From: Macrostomum lignano
Taxonomy: Eukaryota
Assembly (NCBI GenBank): GCA_002269645.1
Contig: NIVC01000827.1
Span: forward strand, 524,484 to 588,483
DNA length: 64,000 bases
Reading direction: 5' to 3'
Shown here: piece by piece, positions 1,334 through 29,292 of the stretch
Layout: each line of letters opens with the position of its first letter
Position numbering within the stretch: position 1 is the stretch's first letter
Program-made: the position numbers and the translations under genes
The notes under the pieces: generated by a model
The model's database searches: none
What the model saw: only the letters and a program-made list of their open reading frames with translations
What the model was told of the DNA's origin: nothing

Positions 1334-4156
1334 TTACTGACTCAGACGCGGATCTTTGGTTGGTGGACGCTTAGGTGTAGGCGACGGCGACGGAGCAAAC
1401 GCAATGAAGCCATCGGAGTGCTTGTACTGCTCGGCATTGTCATAGTTAATCCGATGCAGATGGCCTGAACTGGTTGAATCTGTCCCCATTGACCTCAGAC
1501 TGTTGAGACGGCCGCCCATGGCTTCTAGGATAGCCTGGCCAGCGCATAGATCCCATTTTTTTATCGGACCCGCGTGGAGATAGTTGTCAGCTAATCCCTG
1601 AATGAACAACCAAGTGGGGATTTTAGTAGTATATTAGTATATTTAGATTAATAACCTATGAATATATGAAACACTCTCAAATTTTTAAGACACCCGAATG
1701 GCTCATGTCGATTACAAGACTACAGATACAATGCAAAATTCATTCTAAAAAACCGTCAGCGGATGCTGAGATGCTGAATGACTCACATGAAGTTTATAAA
1801 ATACAAAATGACTTATAGGGAATTGCTATGATTCCAAACGGCTCATGGGGAATCGTTAGGATGCCAAGTGGCTCATGGGGAATCGCTAGGATGCCAAGTG
1901 GCTCATGGGGAATCGCTAGGATGCCAAGTGGCTCATGGGGAATCGCTGGGATGCCAAGTGGCTCATGGGGAATCGCCCTGATACCAAGTGGCTCATGGGG
2001 AATCGCTAGGATGCCAAGTAGCTCATGGGGAATCGCTGGGATGCCAAGTGGCTCATGGGGAATCGCTAAGATGCCAAGTGGCTCATGGGGAATCGCCCTG
2101 ATACCAAGTGGCTCATGGGGAATCGCTAGGATGCCAATTGGCTCATGGGGAATCGCTAGGATGCAATCGCCAAGTGGCTCATGGAGAATCGCTAGGATGC
2201 CAAGTGGCTCATGGGGAATCGCTAGGATTCCAAGTGGCTCATGGGGAATCGCTAGGATGCAATCGCCAAGTGGCTCATGGGGAATCGCTAGGATGCAATC
2301 GCCAAGTGGCTCATGGGGAATCGCTAGGATGCAATCGCCAAGTGGCTCATGGAGAATCGCTAGGATGCAATCGCCAAGTGGCTCATGGGGAATCGCTAGG
2401 ATGCAATCGCCAAGTGGCTCATGGGGAATCGCTAGGATGCAATCGCCAAGTGGCTCACGGGGAATCGCTGTGATACCAGAGTTTCTAAAGAAGTGTTTAG
2501 ACACCAAGACTTATAGAAAACGGCTTGTCACGCGGTGCAAGCCTAAAGTGGTTAAACTGCACAATCCTCCGAAGAGGGACACACACTAGTCTACATATAC
2601 TACATGTAAAATTTCCAAACTTTTTTCTTACCTTACTAAGCAGCAGTAGTTTATAACCCGCCCCGGCAGCCGATAACAAGTCGACGGACTCGTTAGGGAA
2701 CAATTTTCTAGCCGTGCTATTCAATTGAGCGCCCCGATGACTGCGCGAAATCAGCACCCGCCTTCGTCGGTGACTCTTATCGGCGGCGCCTTTGATGTGT
2801 GAGTCCGATTTTAATACGTGCTTATCCAGCACAATAGGTAAATTTAATTGCTCTTTTAGACTGTCGGATACGCGAGAATTGCGCCAAGCCCAATAGGTTT
2901 TATTAGCGAATGGAAAATGCAGCACGCCTAGCAGGGGTGTGCCTCGGTAGGCCACGCACACCTGTTTTAGAGGTATTGTTGCTTGCTTATTACTTCATAA
3001 GTGCGATTTCTAACTAATTAACTAAATCTCTTTCTCCCCCTCTAACTCATTGTCTCTATGCTGCATTTCACTGTCTCTCTGCCTCTATCTCACCGTCTCT
3101 CGGCCTCTATCTCACCGTCTCTCTGCCTCTATCTTGCTCTCTCTCTGCCTCTATCTCACTGTCTCTCTGCTTCTATCTCACTATATCTCTGCCTCTATCT
3201 CACTGTCTGCCTCTATCTCACTGTCTGCCTCTATCTCACTGTCTCTCGGCCTCTATCTCACTGTCTCTCTGCCTCTATCTTACTCTCTCTCTGCCTCTAT
3301 CTCACTGTCTCTGCCTCTATCTCACTGTCTCTCTGCTTCTATCTCGCTATATCTCTGCCTCTATCTCACTGTCTCTGCCTCTATCTCACTGTCTCTCTGC
3401 CTCTATCTCACTGTCTTTCTGCCTCATCGCAACGTCTATCTCTGTCTATCTCACGGCATCTGCGTCTAGCTTTTCCTGACATCCCGGTCTCAATAGCTCC
3501 TATATTTTACTCACGTATAAGCACATATTAGCAGTTAGATTTCAAGCCTCTAAGTCAATAAGTTTATTCGTTTTTTTGGCCATCTATTAATAAGTGTTAA
3601 GCCGGCTTGGTAATTAAAAACGCACCTGAACAGACACGTACTGCAGCAGGTGCTCAGTAAACTCTTGCGTACCATCAAGCGGATCCACCCACACCAGCAC
3701 ATCGTTAGAATTGACAAAGAAGTCGTGTCTCAAAGGCTCCAAATCTGGATTGCGATGACTGGCCAAAGCCAGGGCCCGATAATCCACTGGGGCCGATTGC
3801 GACTCCTCCGACACAACATGTAACCATGGAAACGATTTATGAAATCCGAATACTAATTCGGCATTCGAAGCTAAATCCGCCTTAGTAACTGGGGGCGCCG
3901 AGTCGCTAATCTGAGCACTGGATTTATTAATTTTTGCTGCCGCTCGATGCCGCAAAATCTGTTGGCCAGCTCGTTCGCACAGCTCAATGCTGACTGACAG
4001 CAGCTCCTTGATTGAGACGCCGCGGCCTCTGCCTAGCAGGGGCATCTCGGTGCGCAGCAGGAACAGCAGTGCCGCTGCACTTATCAGGCAGAAGATGCCC
4101 AGCTTGTTTAGCCTGAGACGGCACACCGCCAGCAGTTGGCAACGGGTTTGATATTG
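1334..4156 (-). CDS. IMPAD1: Golgi-type inositol monophosphatase family protein / PAP phosphatase; coding exons ~4156-3626, 2961-2632, 1597-1334; start codon not located
   Basis: N-terminal TM anchor (KLGIFCLISAAALLFLL), TKAD, VVSEE, WVDPLDGTQEFT, SRSH, GAGYK and KKWDLCAG motifs. Phase-0 GT-AG junctions join YVSVQ|VCVAY and LLLSK|GLADNY. Stop is TAA at 1336-1334. Confidence 0.9.
1825..2470. repeat. Minisatellite, 30-bp unit (GGCTCATGGGGAATCGCTAGGATGCCAAGT) with 36-bp variants, in IMPAD1 intron 2
   Basis: Tandem unit read directly. It explains the spurious ORFs 1794-2507, 1828-2589 and 2108-2473. Confidence 0.95.
3050..3450. repeat. CT-rich minisatellite (CTCTATCTCACTGTCTCTGC-like) in IMPAD1 intron 1
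   Basis: Tandem 20-24-bp units visible directly. Confidence 0.9.
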
Positions 4157-4189
4157 CTGCTTTAGGGTAACTTAGAATTGGGGATCTGT

Positions 4190-4615
4190 GGAGGCCCAGC
4201 AACTGAGGACCTGGGAGGCTGGCCCAGCAACTGAGGATCTGGGAGGCTGGCCCAGCAACTGACACTCTGGGAGGCTGGCCCAGCAACTGACGATCTGGGA
4301 GGCTGGCCCAGCAACTGACACTCTGGGAGGCTGGCCCAGCAACTGAGGATTTGGGAGGCTGGCCCAGCAACTGAGGATCTGGGAGGCTGGCCCAGCAACT
4401 GACACTCTGGGAGGCTGGCCCAGCAACTGACGATCTGGGAGGCTGGCCCAGCAACTGACACTCTGGGAGGCTGGCCCAGCAACTGAGGATCTGGGAGGCT
4501 GGCCCAGCAACTGACGATCTGGGAGGCTGGCCCAGCAACTGACACTCTGGGAGGCTGGATCAGAAACTGAAGATCTGGGAGGCTTGCCCAGCAACTGAGG
4601 ATCTGAGAGGCTGGT
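4190..4615. repeat. Minisatellite, 28-bp unit (GGCCCAGCAACTGAGGATCTGGGAGGCT), just upstream of the first conserved IMPAD1 exon
   Basis: Tandem unit read directly. Confidence 0.95.
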
Positions 4616-6027
4616 GATGGCAAGAACAGAATACTAAACCTAATTAAACAACCCCAAGTAAAGTCAGTGAAAGCTAGTTAACATCATAGAAAACCCAAGT
4701 AAATAAAGCAATGCCTGGGATTTTATTTAAGCAACTGTAAAAATTATTTGTTATTAAATAAGATAAGATATGATTGATTATTACAATAACCAACAGAAAA
4801 GTTATATCACAATAAGCTAGACATTCTGTCGCATGATAAAGGTAGATTATTAATAATAATTGAGGTGGTAAAGATTTCAAATAATACTTATACAATAATA
4901 GAGGCTGTCTAAGCCACAGAGTTAGTGGAGTTAGCAATTTTGGTGGAGAAAAAAGGTAGCTAAGTGTTAGAGAAGGAATGTGCATGAGAATACGAATATG
5001 CAGAATTTACACTGGATTTTTTAAGCCATACCGCATACCAAAAAAGACAAAAAGGCTTAGCTAGATTGAGACAAAAATCCATTTAGCAAGCCATCGACGA
5101 TACACACTACTTATCAAGCCAGTAGTATAGTTAGTACTATACATAGTTAAATAAAAAATAATATCAGCGGCCATTAGGAAATGAGCAAAACAAAGGTTTG
5201 TATTTTGCAATATGCCTACTAAAAGTAGGGTGCAGGAGACGTTTTGGAAAAAAATAGTAGGTACTTTTCTATGCATATCAATGGCTTATTTAATAACAAA
5301 ACAATGTCAAACAAAAAATGTACTTCCTAGGAAAAAATAGAAAAAAAACCATTGATTATAGCAACTTGTGCCAGTCGCAGACTGATATAAACTTACAAGC
5401 AAAGTCGTATATTTGTATAAATTTCTGACAGATTAACATTGTAGTGGCAAACTGCTTTGATGCGTAACATACATAATTTTTGTTTGACAACAAATAGAGC
5501 TCCAAAGATGGAACAGATTCTAATAAACATTTCAGTTTTAATGAGTACTAAAGTAGCTGATTACAATTTAAAACACATGGACTTTTAAATCCGAAAACAA
5601 CTGGAATGGATGGAAACAGACAACTATAAAGTAGATAATAGAAAATACAACGTTTGAAATGGAAATTATAGTTTAATTTGATTTTCTATTTACCAGCTAT
5701 TTTTCATTAGTTGAAGGCTTATATTTTGGAAGGTTTTGTATTTTATTATGGGACAAAAAAGTCCCGCTAAGAAAAAAAGTACATTGGAAGATTTGCTACT
5801 TTACGGGATTATCTCATCTAACCAATTTGACTTCATAAAGCAAATATAGGCTTTCAAATACATTTTTCACTTTAAAACATTAGTATCAATGAGCGTAGTT
5901 TACAGTTAGTTAAAAAAGGAAGCAAAACCTACTACTATAATGCTGCATTATCTGTACACGCGAAACAACATCTTGCCACTTCATCAATCTTCTTTGTTCA
6001 CCTATTTATAATTGACCCATGTGAAGT

Positions 6028-6744
6028 TCAAATAACAGACGACAAAGATCTGCCAGGCGGTGTGGGCATCATCAGTTCGTCAGTTGACTTGCCAGCTGAC
6101 ATAGGGAAAGCGTACTCTCTCTGTATCATCAATTCGCGATCTAATTTCACCTGCGGCACCATGAAACAGGCGGTGAAAAAGCAGAAGATCACTGATAGCA
6201 CAGCCAGACCAAAGCTCCAAGATGGCCAGTTGAGCTCAGGGTTTGGTAGCCAATACGGATCCAAGCACTTTGAGCCGAATACGATGATGCCAACGCCTAG
6301 CAGGGTGCCAATAAACAGCATAGCATAGGCCAAGACTTGGCTCAACAGAGCTCGCCTCTCAGGATTATTAACGCACCTGACAACATAGATGACGCACAGG
6401 ATCAGAGCGCCAATATGCAGCATCAGGCCGAACGTGATGCAGAACTGTACAAATCTAAACCAAGGCGGCATCAGGTAGTTTCGAATAGGATAAAATTCTG
6501 GAGCAAACGACCACCAACAGCCGAAATAGGAGCGCATCTCGGGGTCGAGGCGATGCACTAAGCCATCTAGGCAGAATTCCCACAGTCCCAGCCTATCCAT
6601 AGGCGTGTGCACCCTTGGCCAGCTCTGCAGCCAGAAAGGTGTCACAAATGACAATAAAACGCATACGAAACTGAATACTGCACAGAATAGCGCCGCTCTT
6701 GCATAGCCGGACACCAACTGCTGCTTCTCGGAGTTGATCGACAT
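6028..6744 (-). CDS. Invertebrate claudin-like four-TM protein (PMP22/claudin superfamily; resembles the kune-kune/sinuous/pickel group), single exon, 238 aa
   Basis: ATG-to-TGA ORF with four hydrophobic segments, W...GLWEFC...GCWW extracellular-loop signature, EFYPIRNYLMPPW, and WPSWSFGLAV before TM4. Confidence 0.88.
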   Translation of the reverse strand: MSINSEKQQLVSGYARAALFCAVFSFVCVLLSFVTPFWLQSWPRVHTPMDRLGLWEFCLDGLVHRLDPEMRSYFGCWWSFAPEFYPIRNYLMPPWFRFVQFCITFGLMLHIGALILCVIYVVRCVNNPERRALLSQVLAYAMLFIGTLLGVGIIVFGSKCLDPYWLPNPELNWPSWSFGLAVLSVIFCFFTACFMVPQVKLDRELMIQREYAFPMSAGKSTDELMMPTPPGRSLSSVI

Positions 6745-9039
6745 TTCATCAACTGTCTGTTGTTAATTGGATAGTTACAACCTGTGCTTCTGTTTTTATA
6801 GTATCTCTAATTACATGCAATAATGAGGCAATTGTTGTGTTAAATTTTCTTTCAACTATTTATAACCTGAATTGACAAAAGGAAACACGTGATCTGCTAG
6901 AGAGAGACAAGATGTGTTCACAATAATAGAAATTTCTTTTGTAGTTTCTTTTTTGCTAATGTGGCCAAATCTAGCTTATCCCACAGATATTAGAATAACT
7001 AGATATGTCACTCGGAATTAAAATTGTGAAAAAGTAGAGCCTCTACTCTCTTTTCAGCAGTTGTCTGCGCTAATGTAATTTTAATTTGATAGTAGAAGGT
7101 AAAATTCCTTTCCTTCCTCAGGGCTTGCGGCCTCAAGAGCATATGGGGTTAAGAATGAACAAGCATTTGTTAACTCAATGTACACAAATGAACGCAAGAC
7201 GGACAAAACTCAGCCTAGGGGGAGGGGGGGGCCAAGCTAGCTCAGCCAATGAGAGAGCAGTAGAGAGATGTCTGGGCGCCAGCACTAATTCGAAAATTTT
7301 ACATTTTTATAGTTTTCTATAGTCTTAAATCTTAAATTCATTTATTTTTGAACTGGTAAAACTCAGCAGACATGCTTATTTAATTAGCCTGCTTGTAGAA
7401 TAAGGCACATACAAATTTTGCAGCTTTAAAAACTTAAAATTTTGTTTAAAAGTAGATAAATTTTAATTTCACTTTTATAAAGGCAAAAAATGCTTATTTT
7501 GCTACTGAAAAAAAGAGTAGAGAAACGCATTTTTTGCGAGTGACAAATCTAGTTATTCTAGTATATGTGGCTTATCCTAAACTTAAAATTGCATTTTTTA
7601 ATTCCCCTAGGATATATTATTTTCTTGGCATTAAACTCAGATGTTATATACTTAAATATTCATATAGGAAGAATCAAACACCCCTCTACAGTTCAATATA
7701 TCAATTGAAAGTTATAATGTCAAACTTTCATAATGTCAAATATAAGACTAAAACATCAGTTTGTTAAAAAATTCTTGCAAGGCCTTTTCACAAGACCAAA
7801 TTATATCATATTACTAAAAAATAAAAATTATGCTATAATTTCAAAGGTTGCATATGTATGGCATGGTAACTAAACTACTGCATAGGCTTTTTGGGATAGC
7901 TCAAGCATAACTATAACTTTTAAGTCTAACAATTTCCTAGGATGGGGAAACCAATGCTTTTCCTAACTATTAATGGTAGGGTTCCTAAATCCTGGACATT
8001 TTACAATCCTGGGATCTTGGACAAAAATTGACCCAATCCCGGGATCCCAGGCCAATCCCAGGATTGAACAAACAAATTTACGGGAAGCTTTCCATTGTCC
8101 ACAAAACAATTTCTCAACCAATTTGAGCATCATTTGGGTTTCTACTTTCTATTTCTAGCTTGTATGAGAACTGCATTGATAAAATAGTTGAAGTTAGTTG
8201 TTAGTTGTACATACATATTAAACTGCTCTCTAAACTTTGACCATCACATGCACAATAAGCTGAATTAATTGAGAATCAACAACTTCTGTGTCACAAGTTT
8301 AACAAGTTCAAAAGATCTAGTTGGTTATTATTTTTTTGATGAAAAAAGGCTGCAAAACCCCTTTTTCATATATTTTTTGTGAAATTAATGTACCAACCTT
8401 TGACTGTCACACTCGTGGAAATAGCCTATAACTGTTTACTATGCATACTGCACTTTCTATAAAAGGTTTGGATATGTCTTAATTTTGACATTATTGGGTC
8501 AGATGAATGCTTGAATTAAATTTGCAATCTACAATGACTCAGTCAAAACAGGGTAGGAAAGAAACAACTTGGAAGGTGGGTCAGAGATTTATTACCTTAA
8601 CACTAAAGTCTAGACTAGGCACTGCTAGGGCATAGACAGGATACTAGACATACCATAATCACAATTAGTGAATCGATCTATATAAATTGATAATAAGCCA
8701 ATAAACTTATATAGAAAACAAAAGGCAAATCTAATTCTACCCCCATTTAACTCCCCCCTTCTCTGTATGTTTGTCACTTTAGCCAACACCTCCTTTCTTC
8801 CCAGTCTCTTAATGTTTGCCACTTTAAACTTTTCTTACTCTCTCTTCTCAATGGAGTTTTATGGGTTTGCCTCACCACCTAAACTTGTGAGATCTACTGA
8901 TCACCCTCTCCTTTCATTATTTGACTCTGAACAACCAAGTTGGCAACCCCCAAACACCAAAACCAAAAACCTAGTTTTGTGCATAGCTTTATATTGATTA
9001 AAAATGAATCAAGTTGAAATGCTTGCCAGGGGCATTCTT

Positions 9040-18934: not shown

Positions 18935-19504
18935 ACTTCTTAAAGCGAAGTGTAAAAATTTAACAGAAAAATAAATAAAATAAAAAACTAGACCATTCAA
19001 ATTGAAAAATCTGAACTACTTGCACAAACTAACAGAGTCTACAGCTGAATTAAATGCAGAAACTAACAATTTTAAGTCGCGATTGTAATGGAAAATAGCT
19101 GGCCTAGATTGCCAGTCAAGACTCAATAGCTAGAAGACCACAAAGACAGCACAAAACCTGACTAATAGTCATGTGCTCGCACCATATTGAATATTTTATT
19201 ACCTCAATTTTCATTAGCATTTAAAGACAAATTTCCTCAGAAATAAATTATAAATATTTCAAAAATACTTTCCGTGTCCAAAACCAGTCTATCCAGTCTA
19301 CTGTAACTTACACAGTGTAGAAGGAACCATATTTGTTTAAACGCGCAAACATTCAAAAAAAATCTAGGCTGGATGCAGGCTGACTCCGACCTGGCTTAAA
19401 ATAAGGGACTCTCCATCTAGAATTGTGGAAGTGTCACTCGTCGAACAAATAGTAAGAAAATAAACGTCAACACAAACATAAAAAGTAAACTTTGTTTAAT
19501 TCTA

Positions 19505-19542
19505 GCCAACGCGTTTCGTCAAACACTAGACGTCGTCAGGGC
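19505..19542 (-). ncRNA. Minimal type I hammerhead ribozyme motif
   Basis: GCC-CUGACGA-C-GUC(UAGUGUUU)GAC-GAA-ACGCGU-U-GGC. Conserved core, stem II, palindromic stem III, GUU triplet, stem I GCC/GGC. Confidence 0.72.
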
Positions 19543-19857
19543 AAATTCACTCAACCTAAGATCATACCACCAATATATTTAAGCAAAAATCACTGTACAA
19601 TCCAGAGGCGGGTCAAATCAGTCCGGTAGAATTTTTCAAGTTACTAGACGTCGTCAGGGCAAATTCACTTAACCTAAGATCATACCACCAATATATTTAA
19701 GCAAAAATCACTGTACAATCCAGAGGCGGGTCAAATCAGTCCGGTAGAATTTTTCAAGTTACAAGAAATTCTACCGGACTGATTTGACCCGCCTCTGGAT
19801 TGTACAGTGATTTTTGCTTAAATATATTGGAGGTATGATCTTAGGTTGAGTGAATTT

Positions 19858-19895
19858 GCCCTGACGACGTCTAGTGTTTGACGAAACGTGTTGGC
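19858..19895 (+). ncRNA. Minimal type I hammerhead ribozyme motif, with a C-to-T change in stem III (ACGTGT)
   Basis: Same architecture as the minus-strand copy: GCC CTGACGA C GTC TAGTGTTT GAC GAA ACGTGT T GGC. Confidence 0.65.
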
Positions 19896-20344
19896 TAGAA
19901 TTAAACAAAGTTTACTTTTTATGTTTGTGTTGACGTTTATTTTCTCCATCTAGAGTAAGTTGCAAAATCAAAAATGCAAAAAATGAAAAATTGGAAGAAA
20001 GAAAGGAGAAGAAAAAAAGAAAGGAGAGAAGAGAGAGAAATGAAAGAGGAGAAAGAAAAAAGAGAAGAAAGGAGAAAAGGGCAAGAAAAGTCATATATAA
20101 AGTGAAAATTAAGTTGCAATTGGGGGAACTAAGTTGTGATGAAGAGGAACTACGTTGCAAATCTAGACAAAACTAAGTTGCACCAGACAGGTAAAATTTT
20201 GAGGTTGGGCATTTATGTTCAAGTAAAATTGTCATAGACAAAAATGTTTACTATGAGTCTTTTTTTTTTAAAATTAACAAAATAACAACAAAATAACACT
20301 TTCATAAAAATAACAGACATTCCTTCTAAATAGAAAATATCCCC

Positions 20345-20560
20345 AAGACAGCAAGCATCTCTCCAAATAGCAAGCATCTCTCCAAATAGCAAGCATCTTG
20401 CAGATAGCAAGCATTACCCCAGATAGCAAGCATTATCCCAGATAGCAAGCATCCCCTAGATAGCAAGCATTCCCCTAGATAGCAAGCATCCCCTAGATAA
20501 CAAGTATCCCTCTAGATAGCAGACATTTTTCAGATAGCAAGCATCCCTAGATAGAAAGAA
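20345..20560. repeat. Degenerate minisatellite, ~19-20-bp unit (GATAGCAAGCATCCCCA-like)
   Basis: Tandem units visible directly. Confidence 0.85.
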
Positions 20561-20569
20561 TCCCATAGA

Positions 20570-22497
20570 CAGTGTTGGGCACTTCCGTTACCGAGTAACT
20601 TGCAAATGGTAACGCGTTACTTTTTTGTAAAGCATTCCTTACACAAGTTACTTTTTTATTTTAGTAACGGAGTAATGGTAAGTTACTCAAATTTTGGAAG
20701 TCCATTACAGTTACTTTGCAACAATCACAATATTTAAATTTAAAACTGAAATGCTTAGCTAGTACGCCGGTTGTCACAATGTTTTTGCATTTTTCATTCC
20801 TAAATCAAAATTAAGTGAATAGTATCATATGGTACTGTGCTTAATTAATGAAGAAATACTTGAAACATGTTTTACTTTGTTAATTTCAGTAAAATATTTT
20901 CGCTTTTCATTTTCGTTACTAAAAATTTTCAAGTTTGATTCAAACAAACAACCAAAGAAAGAAATTCATCTGTAGCCTCCACAAGTCCCTCCACTGGCAC
21001 TGCAGTACACTACACCATTTTATACAGTTCTATTTATTTTACTCTATTGAATTATTGATATTCGCTTTTTATTATTTATAATTTTAATTATTAATTGTGA
21101 GGTGGGGGTGGAGAAGAATTTTTTTGGTTGGCTCTCGGTTTTGAATAATTTGCTGACACCAGTGAGGTGGGGCGGATTCCTTGTTTGAATTGCTGCCGGC
21201 GTTGCTAAAGTACGAATAAAACCGGAAAACTAGTGCAGATAAATCTCAATGAATTTCTTCTCCTTTACTCCGACTGCCGGGTTCTCAAGTCCGAGGGGAG
21301 GATAGTTGTAATCGTAGCGGAGCAGTCATAGAGCGGCACGGTCATTCAGTTGTAGGAACTTCGGAGATTCTGTCTCCATAAACTGATGCATCGATGTGTT
21401 GAACTCATTACTGTCAGTAGGGTAGTTGCTGCCACCACCATAATTTATGTATTACGGAACAAATAGAGTCTCAGAGCTTTCTTTGAGTTAAGACTGATTG
21501 GCTATTTTACGCCCCACGGGCAAATGACTCAAGATAAGCTATGGCAATGTCAACACAGACAAATAGTAGTTATTGATTAACTTGTCGACGTTATTGGTTA
21601 TATTATAGGTGTTGTTAGATTATTTATATTATCAGCTTATTACTTGAGTTATTACTTGCGCACAAGGATTCTTTTAGGCGGTGACGTATAGACAATTGAC
21701 CGAGCAACAAGACAAAACAAACAGCGAGTTATGGGAGGCAGGACGAGATTAACACCAAATGAACAACTTAAACAGGAAGGGAAAACAAAAATTTAAATAA
21801 ATAAAAATTTTAGAAATTTTTTAGAAAATCATTGCGGCAGAACTGCAGTTTATATAAGAAAAATATTAAACTCAATTCAGGGACGGGGGTTGGGACGGAT
21901 AGCTGGGCTACAGGGTGAGCGAACATGTGGGCAGCCAGATAGACAAATTAAACACATAGCATTGGATAGCAAAATGGCATAGATCAACAAACGGAAAAAA
22001 TCGCTTCAATGGCAGGGCAACCCAAAGGGACAACAATGGGAAGCACAAGGGCAACGATGGGAAAGTATAATGCGGCACAACCGTTGAAAAATTAAATAAA
22101 AATTCCGGGAATTGGGCATCAATTTAAATGGAAAATTATTATTATTAACGTTTTAAGTATTAAAGTTTTGTGGCAACCCACTTGCCACAATTGCCATTGC
22201 CCATTGGTCCTTCTACTTGCCTCACATCGTGTCGCCAATTCCTGTCTCTGTCTTAATCGGTTAATTACAATGCCCAATGGCACATTTCGGTAACAAAAAT
22301 GTGAAAAAAATGTGCAATGTGAAGAAAGCAGAAAATTTTGTTAATAACATGGGTAATGGAAGTGAATAATGGACTTTAACTTAAAAGTTACCAAGTTTTT
22401 GTCTAAAGTTACTAGGCTAACTTAAGTTACTTTTTAAAAATTGGTAACTTTAGTTACAGTAATGCAAGTTACTTTTTGAGTAACTTGCCCAACACTG
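20570..22497. mobile_element. Non-autonomous hAT-type element
   Basis: 12-bp TIR CAGTGTTGGGCA, GTAAC/GTTAC subterminal repeats at both ends, and a perfect 8-bp TSD CCCATAGA (20562-20569 and 22498-22505). Confidence 0.88.
21163..22100 (-). mobile_element. Diverged Gypsy LTR fragment nested in the hAT element, related to the LTRs at 54373 and 58339
   Basis: Begins TGAGGTGGGG right after a PBS remnant (CTGACACCA). Shares GGCAAATGACTCAAGATAA and other blocks with both LTRs at 54-59 kb. Right boundary is approximate. Confidence 0.55.
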
Positions 22498-23631
22498 CCC
22501 ATAGATATATGTAGTTATAAGGTTCATTTGAATGCCTAATTTATTTTGAATAAACATAATTATTCCAAAATCCATCTATAAAAAATGAAGTTTTATTTAA
22601 TTATATTTGTCTTTTATGATTTATTGTCTTATACTAAGAACATGATTATTTTCTATATTAGAATTTTTATAAAATATATTAAAAATGTTTTATTTAAATA
22701 TATTAAATACTTATTAAGTCTTTATAGAAACTAGGGTTAGGTAAAATGCCTATTTTAAGTACTAGTGTTATACTGTAATTATAGCTATAGTTATAGGAAA
22801 ATTTGAGGCAGCACTTCTTCAAGCAAAAAAATTAAATTTTGTTAATTTTTAATATGGCTATGGAAAAATTTGGAATATAGAGATTTGACCATCTAAATAT
22901 AACAAATTGTTGCTACAGAGATGTCATGATAAAATTCGCTATAGCTATGTATTGTACAACTAAAGAGGTATAGAGGTGAAATTGTATAATAATACTACTA
23001 AGTACTATAACTAAAAATGTATAATAAATGCATAGTAATGCTCTATATGTTTAGTAGCTCATTCTGAATTCTAGCATGATTACCAGAATTTCTGTTGCTT
23101 TAAGTATTATACATTTGTTTGTGCTTTACCATTGACCACTATATAGTATAGCAAGGATTGGCAAACTAGCCTATTAGACTACAGTCTACTTAAGGTTTGT
23201 GTTTCTTTGAAGTATCATTTTCTCTAATTTCCTATCCCTTTTTTCCTCTCCTCTTCTTTCTCTTCATTTTCTTTCCCTTCTGTTCTCCCTTCTTTCTTTT
23301 CTCATCTCCTTTCTTGGACATTATTCCCTTGTCTCTCATTTCTCTTATCTCTCTTTTCTTCTCTTTTCTATCACCTCTCTTCTCTCCTCTGGCTCGCAGT
23401 TGTACACTATGTTATTTATTTGGCTAGCTTAATGTACAAAAGTTTTCTGACCCATGTTGTATAGTATAGGATATCATATACTATAATATGCTCACTCGTG
23501 TACTCGAAACTAGCTGCTCTGCTCTCACGAATTTTACAATGCTCTAGAAATCTATATAGCACCCTTGAACTATCAAGCTGCCTAGGAAATAAATATAAAT
23601 ATATAACTAAATTATAAATGAATATTGTACA

Positions 23632-24674
23632 TGTGGAACCTCTGGAATCACATTGATGTGTTCCTTATTACCAGACTTTCTCTGTAATCAAGGAACAATC
23701 ACTTCTAGCTCTTAGCTAGGCAACCCAGTAATCAATAAATGTACTGCTTACCTTGATTCAGGTGAGATCTCGTCTGTAGTCTCCTGCGTCAGTAGTTCTC
23801 TCAGTTGATCTGGTAGATCAGGCGCCTTGGTTCTTCAGTTGCTCTGGTCCTGGTTCCTCTTGTACTTCCGATGAAGTTACTTCCAGCCAGTATCTGCAGT
23901 CAGGACCAATCAGAGGCCTTGTATCAAACAATGGGATCCCTGCGCCGATCTGTGGTTTCACTTAAGCCTTCTCCTAGCAGTGCCTCGATACACTCTAGGT
24001 ATTGCTCCGGTAATCTCTAATAGATCCTCTAAGATCTATTTGGGTAGTCCTTTGGGCGACTACAACCAATGGAGTCTCAAATTGACTCAAGAGTCTCAAT
24101 AGACTCAAACACTATCACAATAGTGAGTCGACTCAACAACGGCGCAAATGAGCAAGGCTTACCACAACAACTCGACCGAGTCTCCTTAGGCTTCCTCTTC
24201 AGAGCTTCTCCTCCTTCCGGAGGTCAGTTTCTTGGTTCCGGGTTCGTTTCAGACCACTTGTATTTATAGGCAAATGGACCTCTCTCGAGGTCGTCCATCA
24301 CCTTTTTCGTAAATATCAAAGGTTCACGCTTTGGTTGCTGTCAAGCATGACAGGGAAGAAAATTGCGCAACTAGTCTACTGCAAGCGCGCATGATTAGCT
24401 GGTAGTTTTCTGTTGCATTTGATTGGTTCATCCAGGTGCAAACCGGGTGCAAGCCAGATGATGAATCGCAGGTGGGGTTTGAATTGACAATTGTAGGTCA
24501 TTCATGACTGATTGGTTACAAAAAATAGCCTGACCGACTTTTCGCTTTTCTGATTAGTTCGTTAAAATTTATATGCAATTCAATGCTTATTGCTGCATGC
24601 TATACTACTGAATAATGTGTAATTAGTATGTTAATTTTTATGGATTTTCGAGGGAGGCAGAATACTCTACAACA
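23632..24674 (-). mobile_element. Possible solo LTR
   Basis: About 1-kb GC-elevated non-coding block bounded by TG...CA, with a minus-strand TATA-like CTATAAATA. No clean TSD found. Confidence 0.3.
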
Positions 24675-24800
24675 TCTGGCAAAAAGTCTCCAGATACAGC
24701 TATGTTGCATTTTTATGAAAAAAGTCACACTGGCCACTAAACTAACACTGGTGTCCGAGTGCATTTAAGGCTGTAACCTGCCTTATCCAACACATTTCAG

Positions 24801-26048
24801 GAGGGTCCAACAAAGTCTTCAATCTGCTTTATTTGCACATCAACAGTCGGGCGCTACACATGTCCCAAATGCGGCATAGCCTACTGTTCAGTAGCCTGCT
24901 ACAGACACGAACGACACTCGGCCTGTTCAGAAGCTTTCTATCGCGACTGCTGCTTGGAGTCGCTTCGCGGTGAAACTGTCGGCACCAGCGAGCGTCGGGC
25001 TATGGCCGAAGTTCTTCGACGTCGCCTAGCTCAGGAAGCTGAGGAGAAGCTTATGGTTGATGACGTCATCGAAGACGAGGAGGACGATCTCGCTAGCCGA
25101 CTCGCTGGCGTCGATCTGGACGCCGTCGATATCGACGCCGACGCTCTGTGGCGCCAATTGACGCCTAGCGAACGGCGTCGTTTTGTGCGCAGCCTGGAGA
25201 CCGGCGAGTGCGCCGACTGTCTGCCGGAGGTGACACCCTGGTGGCAGGGCCCGGTGCGCGATGCCGAGAAGGAACCGCCGACGCTCTCTGCTCCCGATGC
25301 CGCACTGGTAGCAAGCCTTCGGCCAGACCCAGCTAGTACTACTAGAAGGTTGCCTCCGCCTAGTCCGCTGATGCCTCTAGTGTTGTTAGAGGCTCTGCTA
25401 ACCTATGCGTACTCTATGAGGCTCTCCAACTGCGACTTGACCGACTGTCCCGATCAGCTGATCACCTGCTGCCAGCTGCTGTGGCCCTGCGCTCCCGGCT
25501 CTAAATCCTCCGCACACGCATCCACCCCAACCTCCTCCGCCCACGCACCCACCCCAACCTCCTCCGCCCACGCACCCACCCCAACCTCCTCCGCCCACGC
25601 ACCCACCCCAACCTCCTCCGCCCACGCACTCACCCCAAACTCCGCACCAGCCGCTATCGCTCAATGCCCTTCAAACGCTCCTTTGCCAAATTTGGATCTT
25701 ACTGTTGCCAGATTCCTGCATCGTCTCCAGTCGAATCCTAGCCAGTTGTGCTATTCGAATTCCCTGTTCTTGGCCTGCCTGCACGATGCCATCCGCCTGC
25801 TGGGTCAAGATCGATCGCTTCGGTATCCGGAGCGCGCTCTGGCAGATTTGCACTCAGCTCTACAGGTGTTAGCTAATAAAACTCGATACGCTAGGTTGGC
25901 TACTAAGCGCCTGGAGTATCTCTGCGCTTGGCTACTAGCTGAAGAATCTAGCAGATATCAGCAATGCTGTCAGCTTGTGCCGTTGCTAGAGTTGGCTGTG
26001 TGCCAGTACGCTACTGAATTGATGTCGGAGAAAAATACCATTGACTAG
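24801..26048 (+). CDS. ZNHIT2: Zinc finger HIT domain-containing protein 2; single long exon, 5'-partial (no ATG upstream of the HIT finger)
   Basis: The frame extends upstream of the listed ORF to a TTTCAG acceptor at 24800: EGPTKSSICFIC...RYTCPKCGIAYCSVACYRHERHSACSEAFYRD (zf-HIT). Then LWRQLTPSERRRF, PWW, PPPSPL...YAY and RLEYLCAW. Stop is TAG. Confidence 0.88.
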   Translation, partial: EGPTKSSICFICTSTVGRYTCPKCGIAYCSVACYRHERHSACSEAFYRDCCLESLRGETVGTSERRAMAEVLRRRLAQEAEEKLMVDDVIEDEEDDLASRLAGVDLDAVDIDADALWRQLTPSERRRFVRSLETGECADCLPEVTPWWQGPVRDAEKEPPTLSAPDAALVASLRPDPASTTRRLPPPSPLMPLVLLEALLTYAYSMRLSNCDLTDCPDQLITCCQLLWPCAPGSKSSAHASTPTSSAHAPTPTSSAHAPTPTSSAHAPTPTSSAHALTPNSAPAAIAQCPSNAPLPNLDLTVARFLHRLQSNPSQLCYSNSLFLACLHDAIRLLGQDRSLRYPERALADLHSALQVLANKTRYARLATKRLEYLCAWLLAEESSRYQQCCQLVPLLELAVCQYATELMSEKNTID

Positions 26049-26204: not shown

Positions 26205-26820
26205 GATCCTTTGGGTAAGTTTTAAACCTTCATAGATCCTTAAGGTAGCTTTTAGACCCTACCAGATCCTTAAAGTACGTTCTAGACCCTACCGGATCCT
26301 TAAAGTACGTTTTAGATCCTACTGGATCCTTAAAGTACGTTTTAGACCTACCGGATCCTTAAAGTACGTTTTAGACCCTACCGGATCCTTAAAGTACGTT
26401 TAGACCTACCGGATCCCTAAAGTACGTTTTAGACCCTACCGGATCCTTAAGTACGTTCTAGATCCTACCGGATCCTTAAAGTACGTTTTAGACCTACCGG
26501 ATCCTTAAAGTACGTTTTAGACCTACCGGATCCTTAAAGTAGCTTTTAGACCCTATCGGATCCTTAAAGTAGCTTTTAGACCCTACCGGGTCCTTAAAGT
26601 ACATTTTAGACCCTCTCAGATGCATAAAGTAACTTTTAAACGCTTCCATATCATTAAACTAGGTTTTAAATCCTCCCAGATCCTTAAAGTAGGTTTTTAA
26701 CCCTTCCACATCCTTCAAGCAGGTTTTAAGCCCTCCCAGATCCGTAGGGGGATATTTTAAGCCCTCCCAGCTCCCTAGTGTAGGTTTTAAACCGTCTCCA
26801 GATCCCTAGGGCAGGTTTTA
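26205..26820. repeat. Minisatellite, 29-30-bp unit (GACCCTACCGGATCCTTAAAGTACGTTTTA), between ZNHIT2 and ZIP11
   Basis: Tandem unit read directly; it decays towards 26820. Confidence 0.92.
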
Positions 26821-26934
26821 AACCCTCCAAATTCGTCAGATATAGATAGATTCCCAATCATCCCTATAGCTTGGTCCTCAACCCTCATGATCATAGATTC
26901 AGTTTAATCAATAAATCAATCAACAACGTCATAA

Positions 26935-29292
26935 ATGGCCAATTGAAAACTCCCTCTGCTGCGATTTGTCACGCCGCTAGCGCAGACGGCGCTGGGCACC
27001 CTGTTGACCTGGGGCCTGACAGCCCTGGGCGCCGGGTTGGTGTTCCTAGTCCCAGCCGGTTATTCTCACGCTCGCCTATTGAATGCTAGTTTAGGTTTCG
27101 CAGCCGGCGTGATGACGGCCGCATCGTTTTGGTCTCTGCTGGACCCGGCCATAGACATGGCTAGAGGTAGCGGCTCTTACGGTGCCAAAGGCGAATTCGC
27201 CTGGCTACCAGTTGCTATTGGATTCGGGGTTGGCGCCGCTTTTGCTGTCGGAGCCGATCGACTGTTGACGGCGTTAGGCGTTGCTGGGGGAGATGGAGAC
27301 GATCTGGTTAAGGAGCTGACTGGCTCTGCTAGTGGCAAGCCTCGGTCGGCTTCTAACAATCTGCTGTTAGATAGCGCCGCTGACTGTAACAGCGTTGGTG
27401 TACAACTGCCCGAGCTGCTCACTGTCAATGCCGCTGCCGCACTTCGAAGACGCGGAGGCGGCGGCGCTAGCAGCGGCCGGGATGGTGGATCAGTCGAATT
27501 TGCCGAAGATTGGAATGCCGAGGATGAAAGGTGCGGCGCCTTCGCATTTGGAGAGAAATGTTGGGGTGTGGGTTTTTCTAATCCTAACCGTGTGGGTTTT
27601 TTTAATCCTGTGGGTGTGGGTTTTTTCTAATCCTGTGGGTGTGGGTTTTTTCTAATCCTGTGGGTGTGGGATGTTTCTAATCTTGAGGGTGTGGGATTTT
27701 TCTAATCTTGAGGGTGTCGGATTTTTCAAATCTTAAGGGTGTGGGTTTTTTCTAATCCTGTGGGTGTGGGATTTTTCTAATCTTGAGGGTGTGGGTTTTT
27801 TCTAATCCTGTGGGTGTGGGATTTTTCTAATCTTGAGGGTGTGGGGTTTTTCTAATCCTGTGGGTGTGGGGTTTTTCTAAACCTGAGGGTGTGGGATGTT
27901 TCTAATCTTGAGGGTGTGGGGTTTTTCTAAACCTGAGGGTGTGGGATGTTTCTAATCTTGAGGGTGTGGGTTTTTTCTAATCCTGTGGGTGTGGGATTTT
28001 TCTAATCTTGAGGGTGTGGGGTTTTTCTAATCCTGTGGGTGTGGGGTTTTTCTAATCCTAACCGTGTGGGTTTTTTCTAATCCTGTGGGTGTGGGATTTT
28101 TCTAATCCTGAGGGTGTGGGATTTTTCTAGTCCTGAGGGTGTGGAATTTTTTCTGGTTCTGAGGGTGTGGAATTTTTTCTAGTCCTGAGGGTGTGGGATT
28201 TTTCTAGTCCTGAGGGTGTGGGTTTTTCTGGTCCTAAGGGGGTGGAATTTTTCTGGTCCTGAGGGTGTGGGTTTTTCTGGTCCTGAGGGTGTGGGTTTTT
28301 CTGGTCCTGAGGGTGTGGAATTTTTCTGGTCCTGAGGGTGTGGGATTTTTCTGGTCCTGAGGGTGTGGGATTTTTCTGGTCCTGAGGGTGTGGGATTTTT
28401 CTGGTCCTGGGGTGTGGAATTTTTCTGGTCCTGAGGGTGTGGAATTTTTCTGGTCCTGAGGGTGTGGGATTTTTCTGGTCCTGAGGGTGTGGGATTTTTC
28501 TGGTCCTGAGGGTGTGGGATTTTTCTGGTCCTGAGGGTGTGGGATTTTTCTGGTCCTGGGGGTGTGGAATTTTTCTGGTCCTGAGGGTGTGGGATTTTTC
28601 TGGTCCTGGGGGTGTGGAATTTTTCTGGTCCTGAGGGTGTGTGATATTTTAGTGTGCTGATTGATTAATTTTAAAATAAATGAATACGAGCTCTCAATCA
28701 AATGGTATTAGTGTTTTGAGGGAAAAACAGTCAAGTCCTAACACCAACCCTATATCCTCTAACTGGCCTTTGCAGTCGGGCCAAGCAGTTTAGACACGGT
28801 GGCGGCCCCAGCTGGAGGCGGGTGCTGCTATTGGTGCTGGCAATCACTGTACACAACATACCGGAAGGCCTGGCAGTCGGTGTAAGCTTCGGAGCCATTG
28901 GCGCTGTCAGCAACAACAGTAGCAGCAGCCAGGAGGACAATAAAGGTCATTTTGAAGCGGCCCGAAACCTGGCCATCGGAATTGGGATCCAGAATTTCCC
29001 GGAAGGCCTGGCAGTGTCGCTGCCGCTGCACGCGTCAGGAATGAGCCCGTTGAAAAGCTTCTGGTGGGGCCAGCTATCTGGCATGGTGGAGCCGATAGCT
29101 GGCCTGCTCGGCTGTCTGTTAGTTTCCATAGCAACGCCTCTGCTACCCTACGCATTGGCATTCGCAGCCGGAGCCATGATCTACGTTGTATTCGATGCGA
29201 TTGTGCCAGAATCAACCGATTCTAAGTTGACTTCGGCTGGGTGCATTGTGGGATTCATTGTGATGATGGTGCTGGATGTTGGGCTGTCTTGA
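26935..29292 (+). CDS. SLC39A11: ZIP11 (gufA-type) zinc/metal transporter; exons ~26935/26956-27530 and 28776-29292; 5' end ambiguous
   Basis: QTALGTLLTWGLTALGA, SLGFAAGVMTAASFWSLL, SWRRVLLLVLAITVHNIPEGLAVGVSFG, GIGIQNFPEGLAVSLPL, GQLSGMVEP, FAAGAMIYVV and MMVLDVGL. Phase-2 GT-AG intron 27531-28775. Confidence 0.92.
27560..28645. repeat. G/T-rich minisatellite, ~25-27-bp unit (TCCTGAGGGTGTGGGATTTTTCTAA/GG), filling the ZIP11 intron
   Basis: Tandem units read directly, with two subtypes (…CTAA then …CTGG). Confidence 0.95.

What the first reader, a model, noticed from the sequence alone, without database searches (positions are those of the whole stretch)
1334..29292. Candidate operons resolved by spliced-leader trans-splicing, with the SL supplying the start AUG
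Seen: two same-strand pairs with short gaps, claudin then IMPAD1 (~1.9 kb) and ZNHIT2 then ZIP11 (~0.9 kb). IMPAD1, ZNHIT2 and ZIP11 all lack a usable ATG where homologs start, and each has a phase-0 AG acceptor near that point. Established: platyhelminth spliced leaders end in AUG that can initiate translation, and trans-splicing animals use operons. Inference: these genes may be ATG-less in the genome and completed only by the SL.
Basis: inference. Interest (0 to 1): 0.72.

Follow-up and report, generated by a model that had tools for sequence, protein, structure and literature searches.

The report
Flatworm genes started by spliced leader

Summary
The window is exactly the last 64 kb of M. 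lignano contig NIVC01000827.1 (assembly Mlig_3_7). This species has one 35-nt spliced leader (SL) ending in ATG. About 30% of its genes are trans-spliced and about 15% are counted as operonic.

The gene identities, same-strand pairs, gaps and lack of a usable in-frame ATG are all confirmed. GenBank annotates IMPAD1, ZNHIT2 and ZIP11 as 5'-partial proteins with no initial Met.

- **ZNHIT2:**
- **ZIP11:** the junction is probably 26958|26959, not 26986. Sixteen homologues place their Met exactly on codon 26956-26958.
- **IMPAD1:** the junction is probably 4130|4129 (-), not 4159/4156.

Near-identical gene copies differ almost only in the 1-3 bases just upstream of these junctions. The variant bases spell the SL's 3' end (..CATG). 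Mlig_3_7 was polished with RNA-seq, so I read these differences as traces of SL-bearing reads. They indirectly mark the splice sites and explain why two acceptors read TG in the window.

Operon status is inference. ZNHIT2→ZIP11 meets the published criterion (repeat-adjusted gap ≤301 nt). Claudin→IMPAD1 is undecided.

This is known biology and of low novelty.

The parts
6028..6744 (-). Claudin_2/PMP22-family gene. Single exon, 238 aa, with its own genomic ATG at 6744. It is the upstream gene of pair 1.
   Evidence: Pfam Claudin_2, E 2.4e-16. GenBank gene call L004:7383-8099 equals window 6744-6028.
4193..4614 (.). 28-nt tandem repeat (15 copies) in the spacer between the claudin-like gene and IMPAD1.
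   Evidence: TRF.
4130..4135 (-). Inferred IMPAD1 trans-splice acceptor. It reads CTGCTG in the window; CTGCAG in one paralogous Mlig_3_7 copy (L005) and implied by the UniProt model from the ML2 assembly. CTGCAG fits the published motif [T/C]TNCAG.
   Evidence: Copy L005 has CTGCAG. UniProt A0A1I8HWG3 starts LQAVCRL, which is CTG CAG GCG. The difference at 4131 is shown.
3626..4129 (-). IMPAD1 exon 1 as inferred. SL-AUG followed by GCG GTG TGC gives M-AVCRLRLNKLGIFCLISAAALLFLL, the type II membrane anchor.
   Evidence: GenBank PAA76378 starts VCRL at 4126. The exon model is 100% identical to P0005. Five residues precede the L-R-L-N motif, as in the homologues.
2632..2961 (-). IMPAD1 exon 2.
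1334..1597 (-). IMPAD1 exon 3, including the stop codon.
4157..4161 (-). They are phase 0 but unsupported.
   Evidence: Neither the GenBank nor the UniProt model reaches them. They are a poor match to [T/C]TNCAG.
24794..24800 (+). ZNHIT2 trans-splice acceptor ATTTCAG|. It is intact in the window. Two paralogous copies have it overwritten to TTTATG and TTCATG.
24801..26048 (+). ZNHIT2-like single-exon CDS. SL-AUG followed by GAG GGT gives M-EGPTKSSICFIC, with zf-HIT at residues 7-35.
   Evidence: GenBank PAA76380 starts EGPTKSS exactly at 24801 and is flagged partial. Pfam. PDB zf-HIT matches.
26220..26828 (.). 30/60-nt tandem repeats filling most of the ZNHIT2-ZIP11 spacer.
   Evidence: TRF.
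26910..26915 (+). The only canonical AATAAA between the ZNHIT2 stop codon and ZIP11, 43 nt upstream (hexamer end 26915) of the inferred ZIP11 junction. It may be the ZNHIT2 poly(A) signal.
   Evidence: The function is inference only.
26952..26958 (+). Inferred ZIP11 trans-splice acceptor and Met-codon position. It reads CCCTCTG in the window and CCCTATG in two paralogous copies. The original sequence is inferred to be CCCTCAG.
   Evidence: Sixteen homologues align their Met to 26956-26958.
26959..27529 (+). ZIP11 exon 1 as inferred. SL-AUG followed by CTG CGA TTT gives M-LRFVTPLAQTALGTLLTWG.
   Evidence: UniProt A0A1I8IJD8 starts LRFV at 26959. GenBank PAA76381 starts TPLAQ at 26971. The exon model is 100% identical to P0031.
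28775..29292 (+). ZIP11 exon 2, including the stop codon. The intron 27530-28774 is filled by a 25-nt tandem repeat of 43.6 copies.
26984..26985 (+). It is phase 0, but it lies inside the conserved N-terminus and downstream of both annotated CDS starts.

Best explanation
The window is Macrostomum lignano nuclear DNA. ZNHIT2, ZIP11 and IMPAD1 are spliced-leader (SL) trans-spliced genes whose first coding exon begins directly at the trans-splice acceptor in phase 0. The AUG that ends the 35-nt SL (…TTGCAUG) therefore becomes the initiator codon.

The predicted N-termini are:
- M-EGPTK… for ZNHIT2, junction 24800|24801
- M-LRFVTPLAQ… for ZIP11, junction 26958|26959
- M-AVCRLRLNK… for IMPAD1, junction 4130|4129 on the minus strand

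At the last two junctions the assembly reads TG instead of AG. The most likely reason is that Mlig_3_7 was polished with RNA-seq reads. Reads that begin with the last few SL bases would have overwritten positions -2 to -4 of the outron with the SL sequence (…C-A-T-G).

ZNHIT2→ZIP11 is plausibly a two-gene operon: ZNHIT2 is trans-spliced as the first gene and ZIP11 is released from the same precursor. For claudin→IMPAD1, co-transcription is possible but undecided.

What is shown and what is inferred:
- Shown: species and contig identity, absence of an ATG, 5'-partial annotations, the homologue Met position, and the pattern of differences between paralogous copies.
- Inferred: that the differences are polishing traces, that the true bases are AG, and polycistronic transcription.
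For: 1. **Identity.** The window is 100% identical to NIVC01000827.1:524484-588483.
2. **The SL.** M. lignano has a single SL, CGGTCTCTTACTGCGAAGACTCAATTTATTGCATG. About 30% of genes are trans-spliced, and the acceptor motif is [T/C]TNCAG. The Macrostomum SL's final ATG is regarded as a start codon. Cheng et al. 2006 showed that the flatworm SL AUG serves as an initiator (cited).
3. **No in-frame ATG** lies between the upstream stop and the conserved N-terminus of any of the three genes. Any internal ATG would delete the zf-HIT domain, the first ZIP helix or the IMPAD1 membrane anchor.
4. **Database models lack Met.** All GenBank copies are flagged 'partial': ZNHIT2 starts EGPTKSS, PTKSS or TKSS; ZIP11 starts TPLAQ; IMPAD1 starts VCRL. 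The independent ML2/UniProt models start LRFV (ZIP11) and LQAVCRL (IMPAD1). No model has an upstream exon.
5. **Differences at the ZNHIT2 junction.** Over 837 bp around it, the only differences from two paralogous copies are at 24797-24799. TTTCAG becomes TTTATG in one copy and TTCATG in the other, which are the last 3 or 4 SL bases.
6. **Differences at the other two junctions.** At ZIP11 one of only two differences in 731 bp is at 26956: CTG versus ATG in two copies. At IMPAD1 position 4131 differs: CTGCTG versus CTGCAG. The changed positions are nested (-2; then -2 and -3; then -2, -3 and -4), and every changed base equals the SL base.
7. **Polishing method.** The assembly paper states that Pilon polishing used RNA-seq mapped by STAR. 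For the later transcriptome mapping it used --alignEndsType EndToEnd with up to 1000 multimappers.
8. **ZIP11 N-terminus.** Sixteen ZIP11 homologues share M-[IL]-x4-P-x2-Q-x2-LGT..TWG. The window aligns residue for residue, with Met on 26956-26958.
9. **IMPAD1 and ZNHIT2 N-termini.** M-AVCR-LRLN has the same 4-6 residue lead as IMPAD1 homologues. The first Cys of the zf-HIT domain lies at residue 9-11 in the PDB constructs of Hit1 and ZNHIT3 and at residue 10 here.
10. **Operon rule.** The published rule requires a repeat-adjusted gap below 1 kb and a trans-spliced downstream gene. ZNHIT2 stop 26048 to junction 26958 is 910 nt, of which 609 nt is tandem repeat, leaving at most 301 nt.
Against: - No RNA read, cDNA or raw DNA read could be examined. 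SL addition at these sites is inferred from annotation and from assembly differences.
- No ZIP11 copy retains CAG. The simplest reading of that site alone is a real genomic ATG in two copies and an A→C change in the window copy.
- The GenBank CDS starts are not exactly at the inferred junctions: +1 codon for IMPAD1, +4 for ZIP11 and +2 or +3 for two ZNHIT2 copies.
- The one IMPAD1 copy that has CAG (L005) also has 1-bp deletions. The one at 4127 would put the SL AUG out of frame in that copy if real.
- ZNHIT2 and ZIP11 carry different transcriptional-unit prefixes (Mlig029957 versus Mlig011004), so the published RNA-seq assembly did not join them.
- The claudin→IMPAD1 gap is 1.48 kb after subtracting tandem repeats, including a 3'UTR of unknown length.
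Confidence: 0.75

Rival explanations
1. ZIP11 has an ordinary genomic ATG at 26956-26958, as two paralogous copies read. The window copy is then a start-loss allele in a hidden polyploid, either silent or initiating at the near-cognate CUG. No SL-donated AUG is needed for ZIP11.
For: Copies L001 and L003 read CCCTATG|CTG and the window reads CCCTCTG|CTG, a single-base difference. No copy shows CAG. There is no AG at that point in any available copy. M. lignano carries 3-4 near-identical copies of this region.
Against: - The GenBank model on the copy that reads ATG is still 5'-partial and starts 15 nt downstream of that ATG.
- The independent ML2 model of the same allele starts exactly at the codon after the Met position and has no M.
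- The same CAG-to-ATG pattern at ZNHIT2 needs 2-3 adjacent changes and cannot be an ordinary allele.
- The bases just before the site (CTCCCT) are pyrimidine-rich, as expected ahead of a 3' splice site.
Confidence: 0.15
2. The CAG/ATG/CTG differences between copies are real alleles, not polishing artefacts. Some homeologous copies would then have converted the trans-splice acceptor into a genomic start codon at the very same three bases.
For: The differences are present in the deposited assembly. Converting CAG to ATG at a phase-0 acceptor would preserve the protein exactly, so it could be tolerated.
Against: - It requires 2 and 3 adjacent substitutions, in two different forms, within 837 bp that are otherwise identical.
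- The changed bases always equal the SL's bases and are nested from the junction outward.
- The assembly is documented to have been polished with RNA-seq.
- The annotated CDSs on the 'ATG' copies still lack the Met.
Confidence: 0.08
3. The reader's acceptors (26986 for ZIP11, 4159/4156 for IMPAD1) are the sites actually used.
For: In the window they are the only phase-0 AGs upstream of the conserved cores. They could serve as minor alternative acceptors.
Against: - Both database models of ZIP11 start upstream of 26986, and that site would remove nine residues that align with 16 homologues.
- Neither IMPAD1 model reaches 4156 or 4159, although the frame is open there.
- Both are poor matches to [T/C]TNCAG.
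- They would give IMPAD1 a 15-residue lead instead of the usual 4-6.
Confidence: 0.07
4. The genes have conventional upstream cis-spliced 5' exons carrying an ATG that both annotations missed.
For: Gene models in this assembly are incomplete. For example, a PIG-L ORF beyond the window is not among the called genes.
Against: - Three genes, several copies each, in two independent annotations all lack such an exon.
- An upstream exon would have to end in …CATG at ZNHIT2 and …ATG at ZIP11 to explain the bases written over those acceptors.
- This species trans-splices about 30% of its genes, enriched for conserved genes.
Confidence: 0.03
5. The same-strand pairs are independently transcribed neighbours, each trans-spliced from its own outron, and not operons.
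For: - ZNHIT2 itself is trans-spliced with no upstream same-strand gene for about 18 kb.
- About 60% of trans-spliced M. lignano genes are not in operons.
- The locus tags put ZNHIT2 and ZIP11 in different transcriptional units.
- The claudin→IMPAD1 spacer is 1.48 kb after repeat subtraction.
Against: - The repeat-adjusted ZNHIT2→ZIP11 gap is at most 301 nt. The published analysis says transcriptional units tend to break in repeat-rich operon spacers.
- The only AATAAA after ZNHIT2 lies 43 nt before the ZIP11 junction.
- The IMPAD1 tags Mlig004071g4 and g8 imply several genes per transcriptional-unit cluster.
Confidence: 0.4

Closest known systems
Flatworm SL 3'-terminal AUG used as initiator methionine (Cheng, Cohen, Ndegwa & Davis 2006, J Biol Chem 281:733, as cited in PMC9851317 and PMC12582326); called 'slORFs' in slORFfinder
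   Same: The SL ends in AUG, the acceptor is in phase 0 with the ORF, there is no genomic ATG, and conserved N-termini are restored only when the SL's Met is added.
   Different: [quoted passage not shown] Here the species is the free-living M. lignano and no cDNA was examined.
M. lignano SL trans-splicing and operons (Wudarski et al. 2017, PMC5730564; Ustyantsev & Berezikov 2021, PMC8629364)
   Same: Same organism, same assembly and same contig. These genes are part of that genome-wide annotation. The ZNHIT2 acceptor, and IMPAD1's as read in another copy (CTGCAG), fit [T/C]TNCAG; ZIP11's inferred one only partly. Repeat-filled operon spacers are as described there.
   Different: Those papers do not discuss SL-donated start codons gene by gene. 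They also do not mention that RNA-seq polishing may have altered acceptor dinucleotides.
C. elegans-type operons resolved by trans-splicing
   Same: Same-strand genes with a short spacer, where the downstream gene receives an SL next to the upstream gene's poly(A) signal.
   Different: M. lignano has no specialised SL2. The spacers are inflated by tandem repeats. Trans-splicing of first or monocistronic genes is common, so it is not diagnostic of an operon.

Membership tests
SL trans-spliced mRNA with SL-donated start codon (flatworm type) | The organism has an SL RNA whose exon ends in AUG. | tested here: met
   The window is M. lignano. The published SL ends …TTGCATG. There is no SL gene in the window itself.
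SL trans-spliced mRNA with SL-donated start codon (flatworm type) | No in-frame genomic ATG lies between the upstream stop codon and the conserved N-terminus. | tested here: met
   for all three genes in the window copy. Two paralogous copies read ATG at the ZIP11 and ZNHIT2 junctions; I interpret these as artefacts.
SL trans-spliced mRNA with SL-donated start codon (flatworm type) | A 3' splice acceptor (AG) lies immediately before the first codon, in phase 0. | tested here: inconclusive
   Met for ZNHIT2 (TTTCAG|GAG). For IMPAD1 the AG is present in copy L005 and implied by the ML2 model, but the window reads TG. For ZIP11 no copy shows AG at 26957-26958.
SL trans-spliced mRNA with SL-donated start codon (flatworm type) | SL sequence is found on the mature mRNA at that junction. 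| not testable with these tools
   There is no access to reads or cDNAs. The evidence is indirect: 5'-partial CDS models and SL 3'-end bases written over the acceptors in paralogous copies.
SL trans-spliced mRNA with SL-donated start codon (flatworm type) | Translation starts at the SL AUG. | not testable with these tools
   Inferred only, from agreement of N-terminal length and sequence with homologues.
M. lignano operon (operational definition of PMC8629364) | Adjacent genes on the same strand with no opposite-strand gene between them. | tested here: met
   Gene calls; open frames.
M. lignano operon (operational definition of PMC8629364) | The downstream gene is SL trans-spliced. | tested here: inconclusive
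   Inferred as described above for ZIP11 and IMPAD1. There are no reads.
M. lignano operon (operational definition of PMC8629364) | The repeat-adjusted distance between transcripts is below 1 kb. | tested here: inconclusive
   ZNHIT2→ZIP11 is met: at most 301 nt. Claudin→IMPAD1 is 1.48 kb from the stop codon. It passes only if the claudin 3'UTR is about 0.5 kb or longer, for example with the AATAAA at 4727. With the AATAAA at 5747 it fails.
M. lignano operon (operational definition of PMC8629364) | A polycistronic precursor is observed. | not testable with these tools
   ZNHIT2 (Mlig029957) and ZIP11 (Mlig011004) have different transcriptional-unit prefixes. The IMPAD1 tags g4 and g8 hint at multi-gene units.

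The most novel reading that the evidence does not exclude
The CAG/ATG/CTG differences at the junctions are real alleles rather than polishing artefacts. Homeologous copies in this neopolyploid would then be caught switching between an SL-donated start codon and a genomic start codon at the same three bases: the trans-splice acceptor CAG becomes ATG. That would be a direct snapshot of how SL-dependent genes gain or lose independence from trans-splicing.
Probability: 0.08. Interest if true: 0.65.

Novelty: already known. Interest (0 to 1): 0.22.

Why it matters
For biology, little is new. SL-donated start codons and repeat-inflated operons are published for flatworms and for this very genome.

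The practical value is twofold.

1. It shows how to read '5'-partial, no Met' gene models in M. lignano. The true N-termini are probably M-EGPTK (ZNHIT2), M-LRFVTPL (ZIP11) and M-AVCRL (IMPAD1).
2. It suggests that the reference assembly Mlig_3_7 carries SL-derived bases written over trans-splice acceptors by RNA-seq polishing. If this is general, it would destroy AG acceptors and create spurious genomic ATGs.

Tried and rejected
- **SL in the window.** I searched for the 35-nt SL with up to 3 mismatches and found none. Rfam at gathering threshold also found nothing. The SL RNA gene is therefore elsewhere, as expected.
- **ML2 contigs.** I tried to fetch the independent ML2 contigs that encode the UniProt models, to read the true acceptor bases. 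They are not on record.
- **Claudin locus tag.** I tried to get the GenBank locus tag of the claudin-like gene to see whether it shares IMPAD1's transcriptional-unit prefix. The cluster look-up returned no name, and the locus tags appear in no searchable paper.
- **Third claudin copy.** I fetched a third copy to see whether the SL-like 10-mer upstream of the gene is an overwrite. All three copies are identical, so this is unresolved.
- **Retrogene idea for the claudin-like gene.** I considered that the intronless gene is a retrogene carrying a relic SL. There is no poly(A) tract after either AATAAA, so I rejected this as unsupported.
- **ZNHIT2 homologues.** I looked for them to align the N-terminus. 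Only M. lignano copies passed the threshold. I used Pfam and PDB zf-HIT matches instead.
- **Bacterial-type scans.** The promoter and terminator scans were not used because they do not apply to this eukaryote.

Full report
**1. What the window is**

The ZNHIT2-like ORF is 98% identical to three GenBank proteins of Macrostomum lignano. The 2% is a single 9-residue gap. BLAST of the fetched contigs shows the window is 100% identical to NIVC01000827.1 of assembly Mlig_3_7 (GCA_002269645.1), positions 524484-588483, which is the last 64 kb of that contig. M. lignano is a hidden polyploid, and two to three further copies of this region at 98-99% identity lie on other contigs (L001, L003, L005, L006, L009). 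These copies turned out to be the most informative evidence.

**2. Background from the literature**

- M. lignano has one 35-nt spliced leader (SL), CGGTCTCTTACTGCGAAGACTCAATTTATTGCATG.
- About 30% of its genes are trans-spliced and about 15% are assigned to operons.
- The motif at trans-splice acceptors is [T/C]TNCAG.
- Operon spacers are inflated by repeats. The operational operon rule is therefore a repeat-adjusted gap below 1 kb with a trans-spliced downstream gene (PMC8629364).
- All flatworm SLs end in AUG. Cheng et al. 2006 showed that this AUG initiates translation of a subset of schistosome mRNAs (cited).
- For Macrostomum the final ATG is explicitly called a translation start codon (PMC10468722).
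- The SL itself is not in the window.

**3. Checking the observation**

Pfam confirms Claudin_2, Inositol_P, zf-HIT and Zip domains. My exon models are 100% identical to the GenBank proteins for IMPAD1 and ZIP11.

| Gene | Strand | Exons or CDS |
|---|---|---|
| IMPAD1 | - | 4129-3626, 2961-2632, 1597-1334 |
| ZIP11 | + | 26959-27529, 28775-29292 |
| ZNHIT2 | + | 24801-26048 |
| Claudin-like | - | 6744-6028, with its own ATG |

In the window none of the three other genes has an in-frame ATG between the nearest upstream stop and the conserved N-terminus.

| Gene | Upstream in-frame stop | First in-frame ATG |
|---|---|---|
| ZNHIT2 | 24774 | 25002 |
| ZIP11 | 26944 | 27112 |
| IMPAD1 | 4174 | 4045 |

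Using those internal ATGs would delete the zf-HIT domain (residues 7-35), the first ZIP helix or the IMPAD1 membrane anchor. However, a phase-0 AG is expected about every 48 nt, so their presence is weak evidence.

**4. Database models**

Every GenBank copy is flagged 'partial' and lacks an initial Met.

| Gene | GenBank starts | ML2/UniProt start |
|---|---|---|
| ZNHIT2 | EGPTKSS (exactly 24801 on this contig), PTKSS, TKSS | none retrieved |
| ZIP11 | TPLAQ (26971) | LRFVTPLAQ (26959) |
| IMPAD1 | VCRL (4126) | LQAVCRL |

**5. Where homologues start**

Sixteen ZIP11 proteins from molluscs, insects, chordates and others all begin M-[IL]-x4-P-x2-Q-x2-LGT(L/F)(L/F)TWG. The window reads (L)-L-R-F-V-T-P-L-A-Q-T-A-L-G-T-L-L-T-W-G. 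It aligns residue for residue, with the homologues' Met on codon 26956-26958.

IMPAD1 homologues have 4-6 residues before the [IV]-[RK]-[IL]-N motif that precedes the membrane anchor. M-AVCR-LRLN (junction at 4129) fits this.

zf-HIT proteins with solved structures carry the finger at the extreme N-terminus, which is consistent with M-EGPTKSSIC.

**6. The paralogue comparison**

Positions are counted back from the junction, so -1 is the last base before the exon. The SL's last four bases are C(-4) A(-3) T(-2) G(-1).

- **ZNHIT2.** Over 837 bp around the 5' end, the only differences between the window and two other copies are at 24797-24799. The window and L002 read TTTCAG|GAG, L003 reads TTTATG|GAG and L001 reads TTCATG|GAG.
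- **ZIP11.** Over 731 bp there are two differences. One is at 26956: the window reads CCCTCTG|CTG, while L001 and L003 read CCCTATG|CTG.
- **IMPAD1.** The window and three other loci (L004, which is the window's own contig, plus L006 and L009) read CTGCTG|GCG. L005 reads CTGCAG|GC-G, and the ML2 protein (LQ) implies CTG CAG.

In every case the variable positions are -2, -3 or -4 from a phase-0 junction. They are nested (-2; then -2 and -3; then -2, -3 and -4), and the variant base equals the SL base.

The assembly paper states that Mlig_3_7 was polished with Pilon using Illumina DNA and RNA-seq mapped by STAR. For the later transcriptome assembly, RNA-seq was mapped with --alignEndsType EndToEnd and up to 1000 multimappers. 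The paper does not say which STAR settings were used for polishing. If reads were mapped end to end there too, a read that begins with the last few SL bases would carry those bases onto the outron. RNA multimappers count at all copies whereas DNA reads are shared among them, which would explain the copy-to-copy variation.

I therefore read these differences as traces of SL-bearing reads left in the assembly. That is indirect but specific evidence that RNA with …CATG is joined to GAGGGT (24801), CTGCGA (26959) and GCGGTG (4129). It also explains why two of the three true acceptors read TG in the window and could not be found by a sequence-only reader.

With AG restored, IMPAD1's CTGCAG and ZNHIT2's TTTCAG match [T/C]TNCAG exactly. 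ZIP11's CCCTCAG is a pyrimidine-rich CAG site.

The fortuitous similarity of CTGCAG|G to the SL end TTGCATG|G also explains why the ML2 model extends two codons (LQ) upstream of the junction.

**7. Weak points**

- I could not see any read.
- No ZIP11 copy retains CAG. A real genomic ATG in two copies, with a start-loss or CUG-initiating allele in the window, remains possible (about 0.15). Against it:
  - the GenBank model on an 'ATG' copy is still partial and starts 15 nt downstream of that ATG;
  - the ML2 model of that allele starts exactly one codon after the Met position and has no M.
- The GenBank CDS starts scatter 0-4 codons downstream of the junctions. I attribute this to end-to-end mapping losing coverage at junctions, but that is inference.
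- L005 carries 1-bp deletions near the IMPAD1 junction that look like unpolished PacBio errors. This fits its retaining CAG, but I cannot prove it.

**8. Operons**

*ZNHIT2→ZIP11.* The distance from stop codon to junction is 910 nt, of which 609 nt is tandem repeat (26220-26828). That leaves at most 301 nt including the 3'UTR. The only canonical AATAAA (26910) ends 43 nt before the junction. By the published rule this pair counts as an operon. However, the GenBank tags (Mlig029957 and Mlig011004) show that the RNA-seq transcriptional units were not joined. The authors say this often happens in repeat-rich spacers.

*Claudin→IMPAD1.* The distance is 1.9 kb. Subtracting the 422-nt repeat gives 1.48 kb including the claudin 3'UTR. 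With the AATAAA at 4727 the adjusted gap is about 150 nt. With the one at 5747 it is about 1.17 kb. The IMPAD1 tags Mlig004071g4 and g8 hint at multi-gene units.

ZNHIT2 has no same-strand neighbour for about 18 kb upstream. Relative to one paralogue, the window has a 4.9-kb insertion that ends 138 nt before the ZNHIT2 acceptor. ZNHIT2 is therefore trans-spliced as a first or solitary gene.

Polycistronic transcription is thus plausible for pair 2, open for pair 1 and shown for neither.

**9. Verdict**

The central inference, that the SL supplies the AUG, is well supported. Two of the three proposed sites are probably wrong by about 30 nt. The operon claim is unproven.

The biology is already published for flatworms and for this genome, so novelty is low. 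The by-product worth passing on is the likely RNA-polishing artefact at trans-splice acceptors in Mlig_3_7.

Noticed in passing
window 6814-6823 (-): TTATTGCATG is an exact match to the last 10 bases of the SL. It lies 70 nt upstream of the claudin-like gene's ATG, on the gene's strand, and is followed by TAATTAG. It is identical in all three copies. One such 10-mer match per window is not rare by chance (0.34 expected). Its position and the sharp 10-nt boundary (STAR's default mismatch cap, from my own knowledge) suggest a longer SL overwrite and a trans-splice site at 6813. A TATAAATA box about 35 nt further upstream argues instead for an ordinary promoter.
   Followed up: partly
L004:14767-16301 (beyond window position 1, same strand as IMPAD1): An ORF with a PIG-L domain (E 1.7e-15) lies between IMPAD1 and GWT1/PIG-W and is not among the called genes. 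A further open frame runs across the GWT1 ATG. The same-strand cluster is therefore claudin-like → IMPAD1 → PIG-L → PIG-W, with two consecutive GPI-anchor biosynthesis steps adjacent.
   Followed up: partly
window 25506-25643 (+): A 27-nt coding tandem repeat (5.1 copies) lies in ZNHIT2. The GenBank protein of this same contig (PAA76380, 406 aa) lacks one 9-residue unit relative to the genomic ORF (415 aa). The deposited CDS therefore does not translate colinearly from the contig.
   Followed up: partly
window 19769-24662, plus 19455-19634 / 19766-19945: About 4.9 kb is present in the window and in copy L003 but absent from copy L001, ending 138 nt upstream of the ZNHIT2 acceptor. Its left edge coincides with a 180-nt inverted repeat (99% complementary) and a 118-nt tandem duplication. 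It could be a transposon, a rearrangement or an assembly artefact.
   Followed up: partly
window 14916-15851 (-) and 17092-17847 (-): There are transposase-like ORFs: an IS1595/ISXO2-like DDE domain (E 3.9e-22) and a weak MULE match (E 0.0075, below the Pfam cut-off).
   Followed up: partly
window 1-324, 1818-2440, 3039-3454, 4193-4614, 26220-26828, 27564-28650, 29713-30186: Tandem repeats of 21-30 nt fill nearly every intron and spacer of these genes: both IMPAD1 introns, the ZIP11 intron and both intergenic gaps.
   Followed up: no
L005:1248-1448 (copy of window 4060-4260, -): This copy has two 1-bp deletions in homopolymer runs next to the IMPAD1 junction and keeps CAG at the acceptor. It looks like a poorly polished contig end. 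If the deletions are real, the one at 4127 would put the SL AUG out of frame in this copy.
   Followed up: partly
window 60537-61934 (+) and about 40074-40076 (-): A SCAPER_N-domain gene (E 1.6e-27) has a TTGCAG| acceptor-like site 17 nt upstream of its ATG at 60579. The ammonium-transporter gene starts at …ATATCATG|GCA (ATG at 40076-40074), so the four bases ending at its ATG also equal the SL's end.
   Followed up: no
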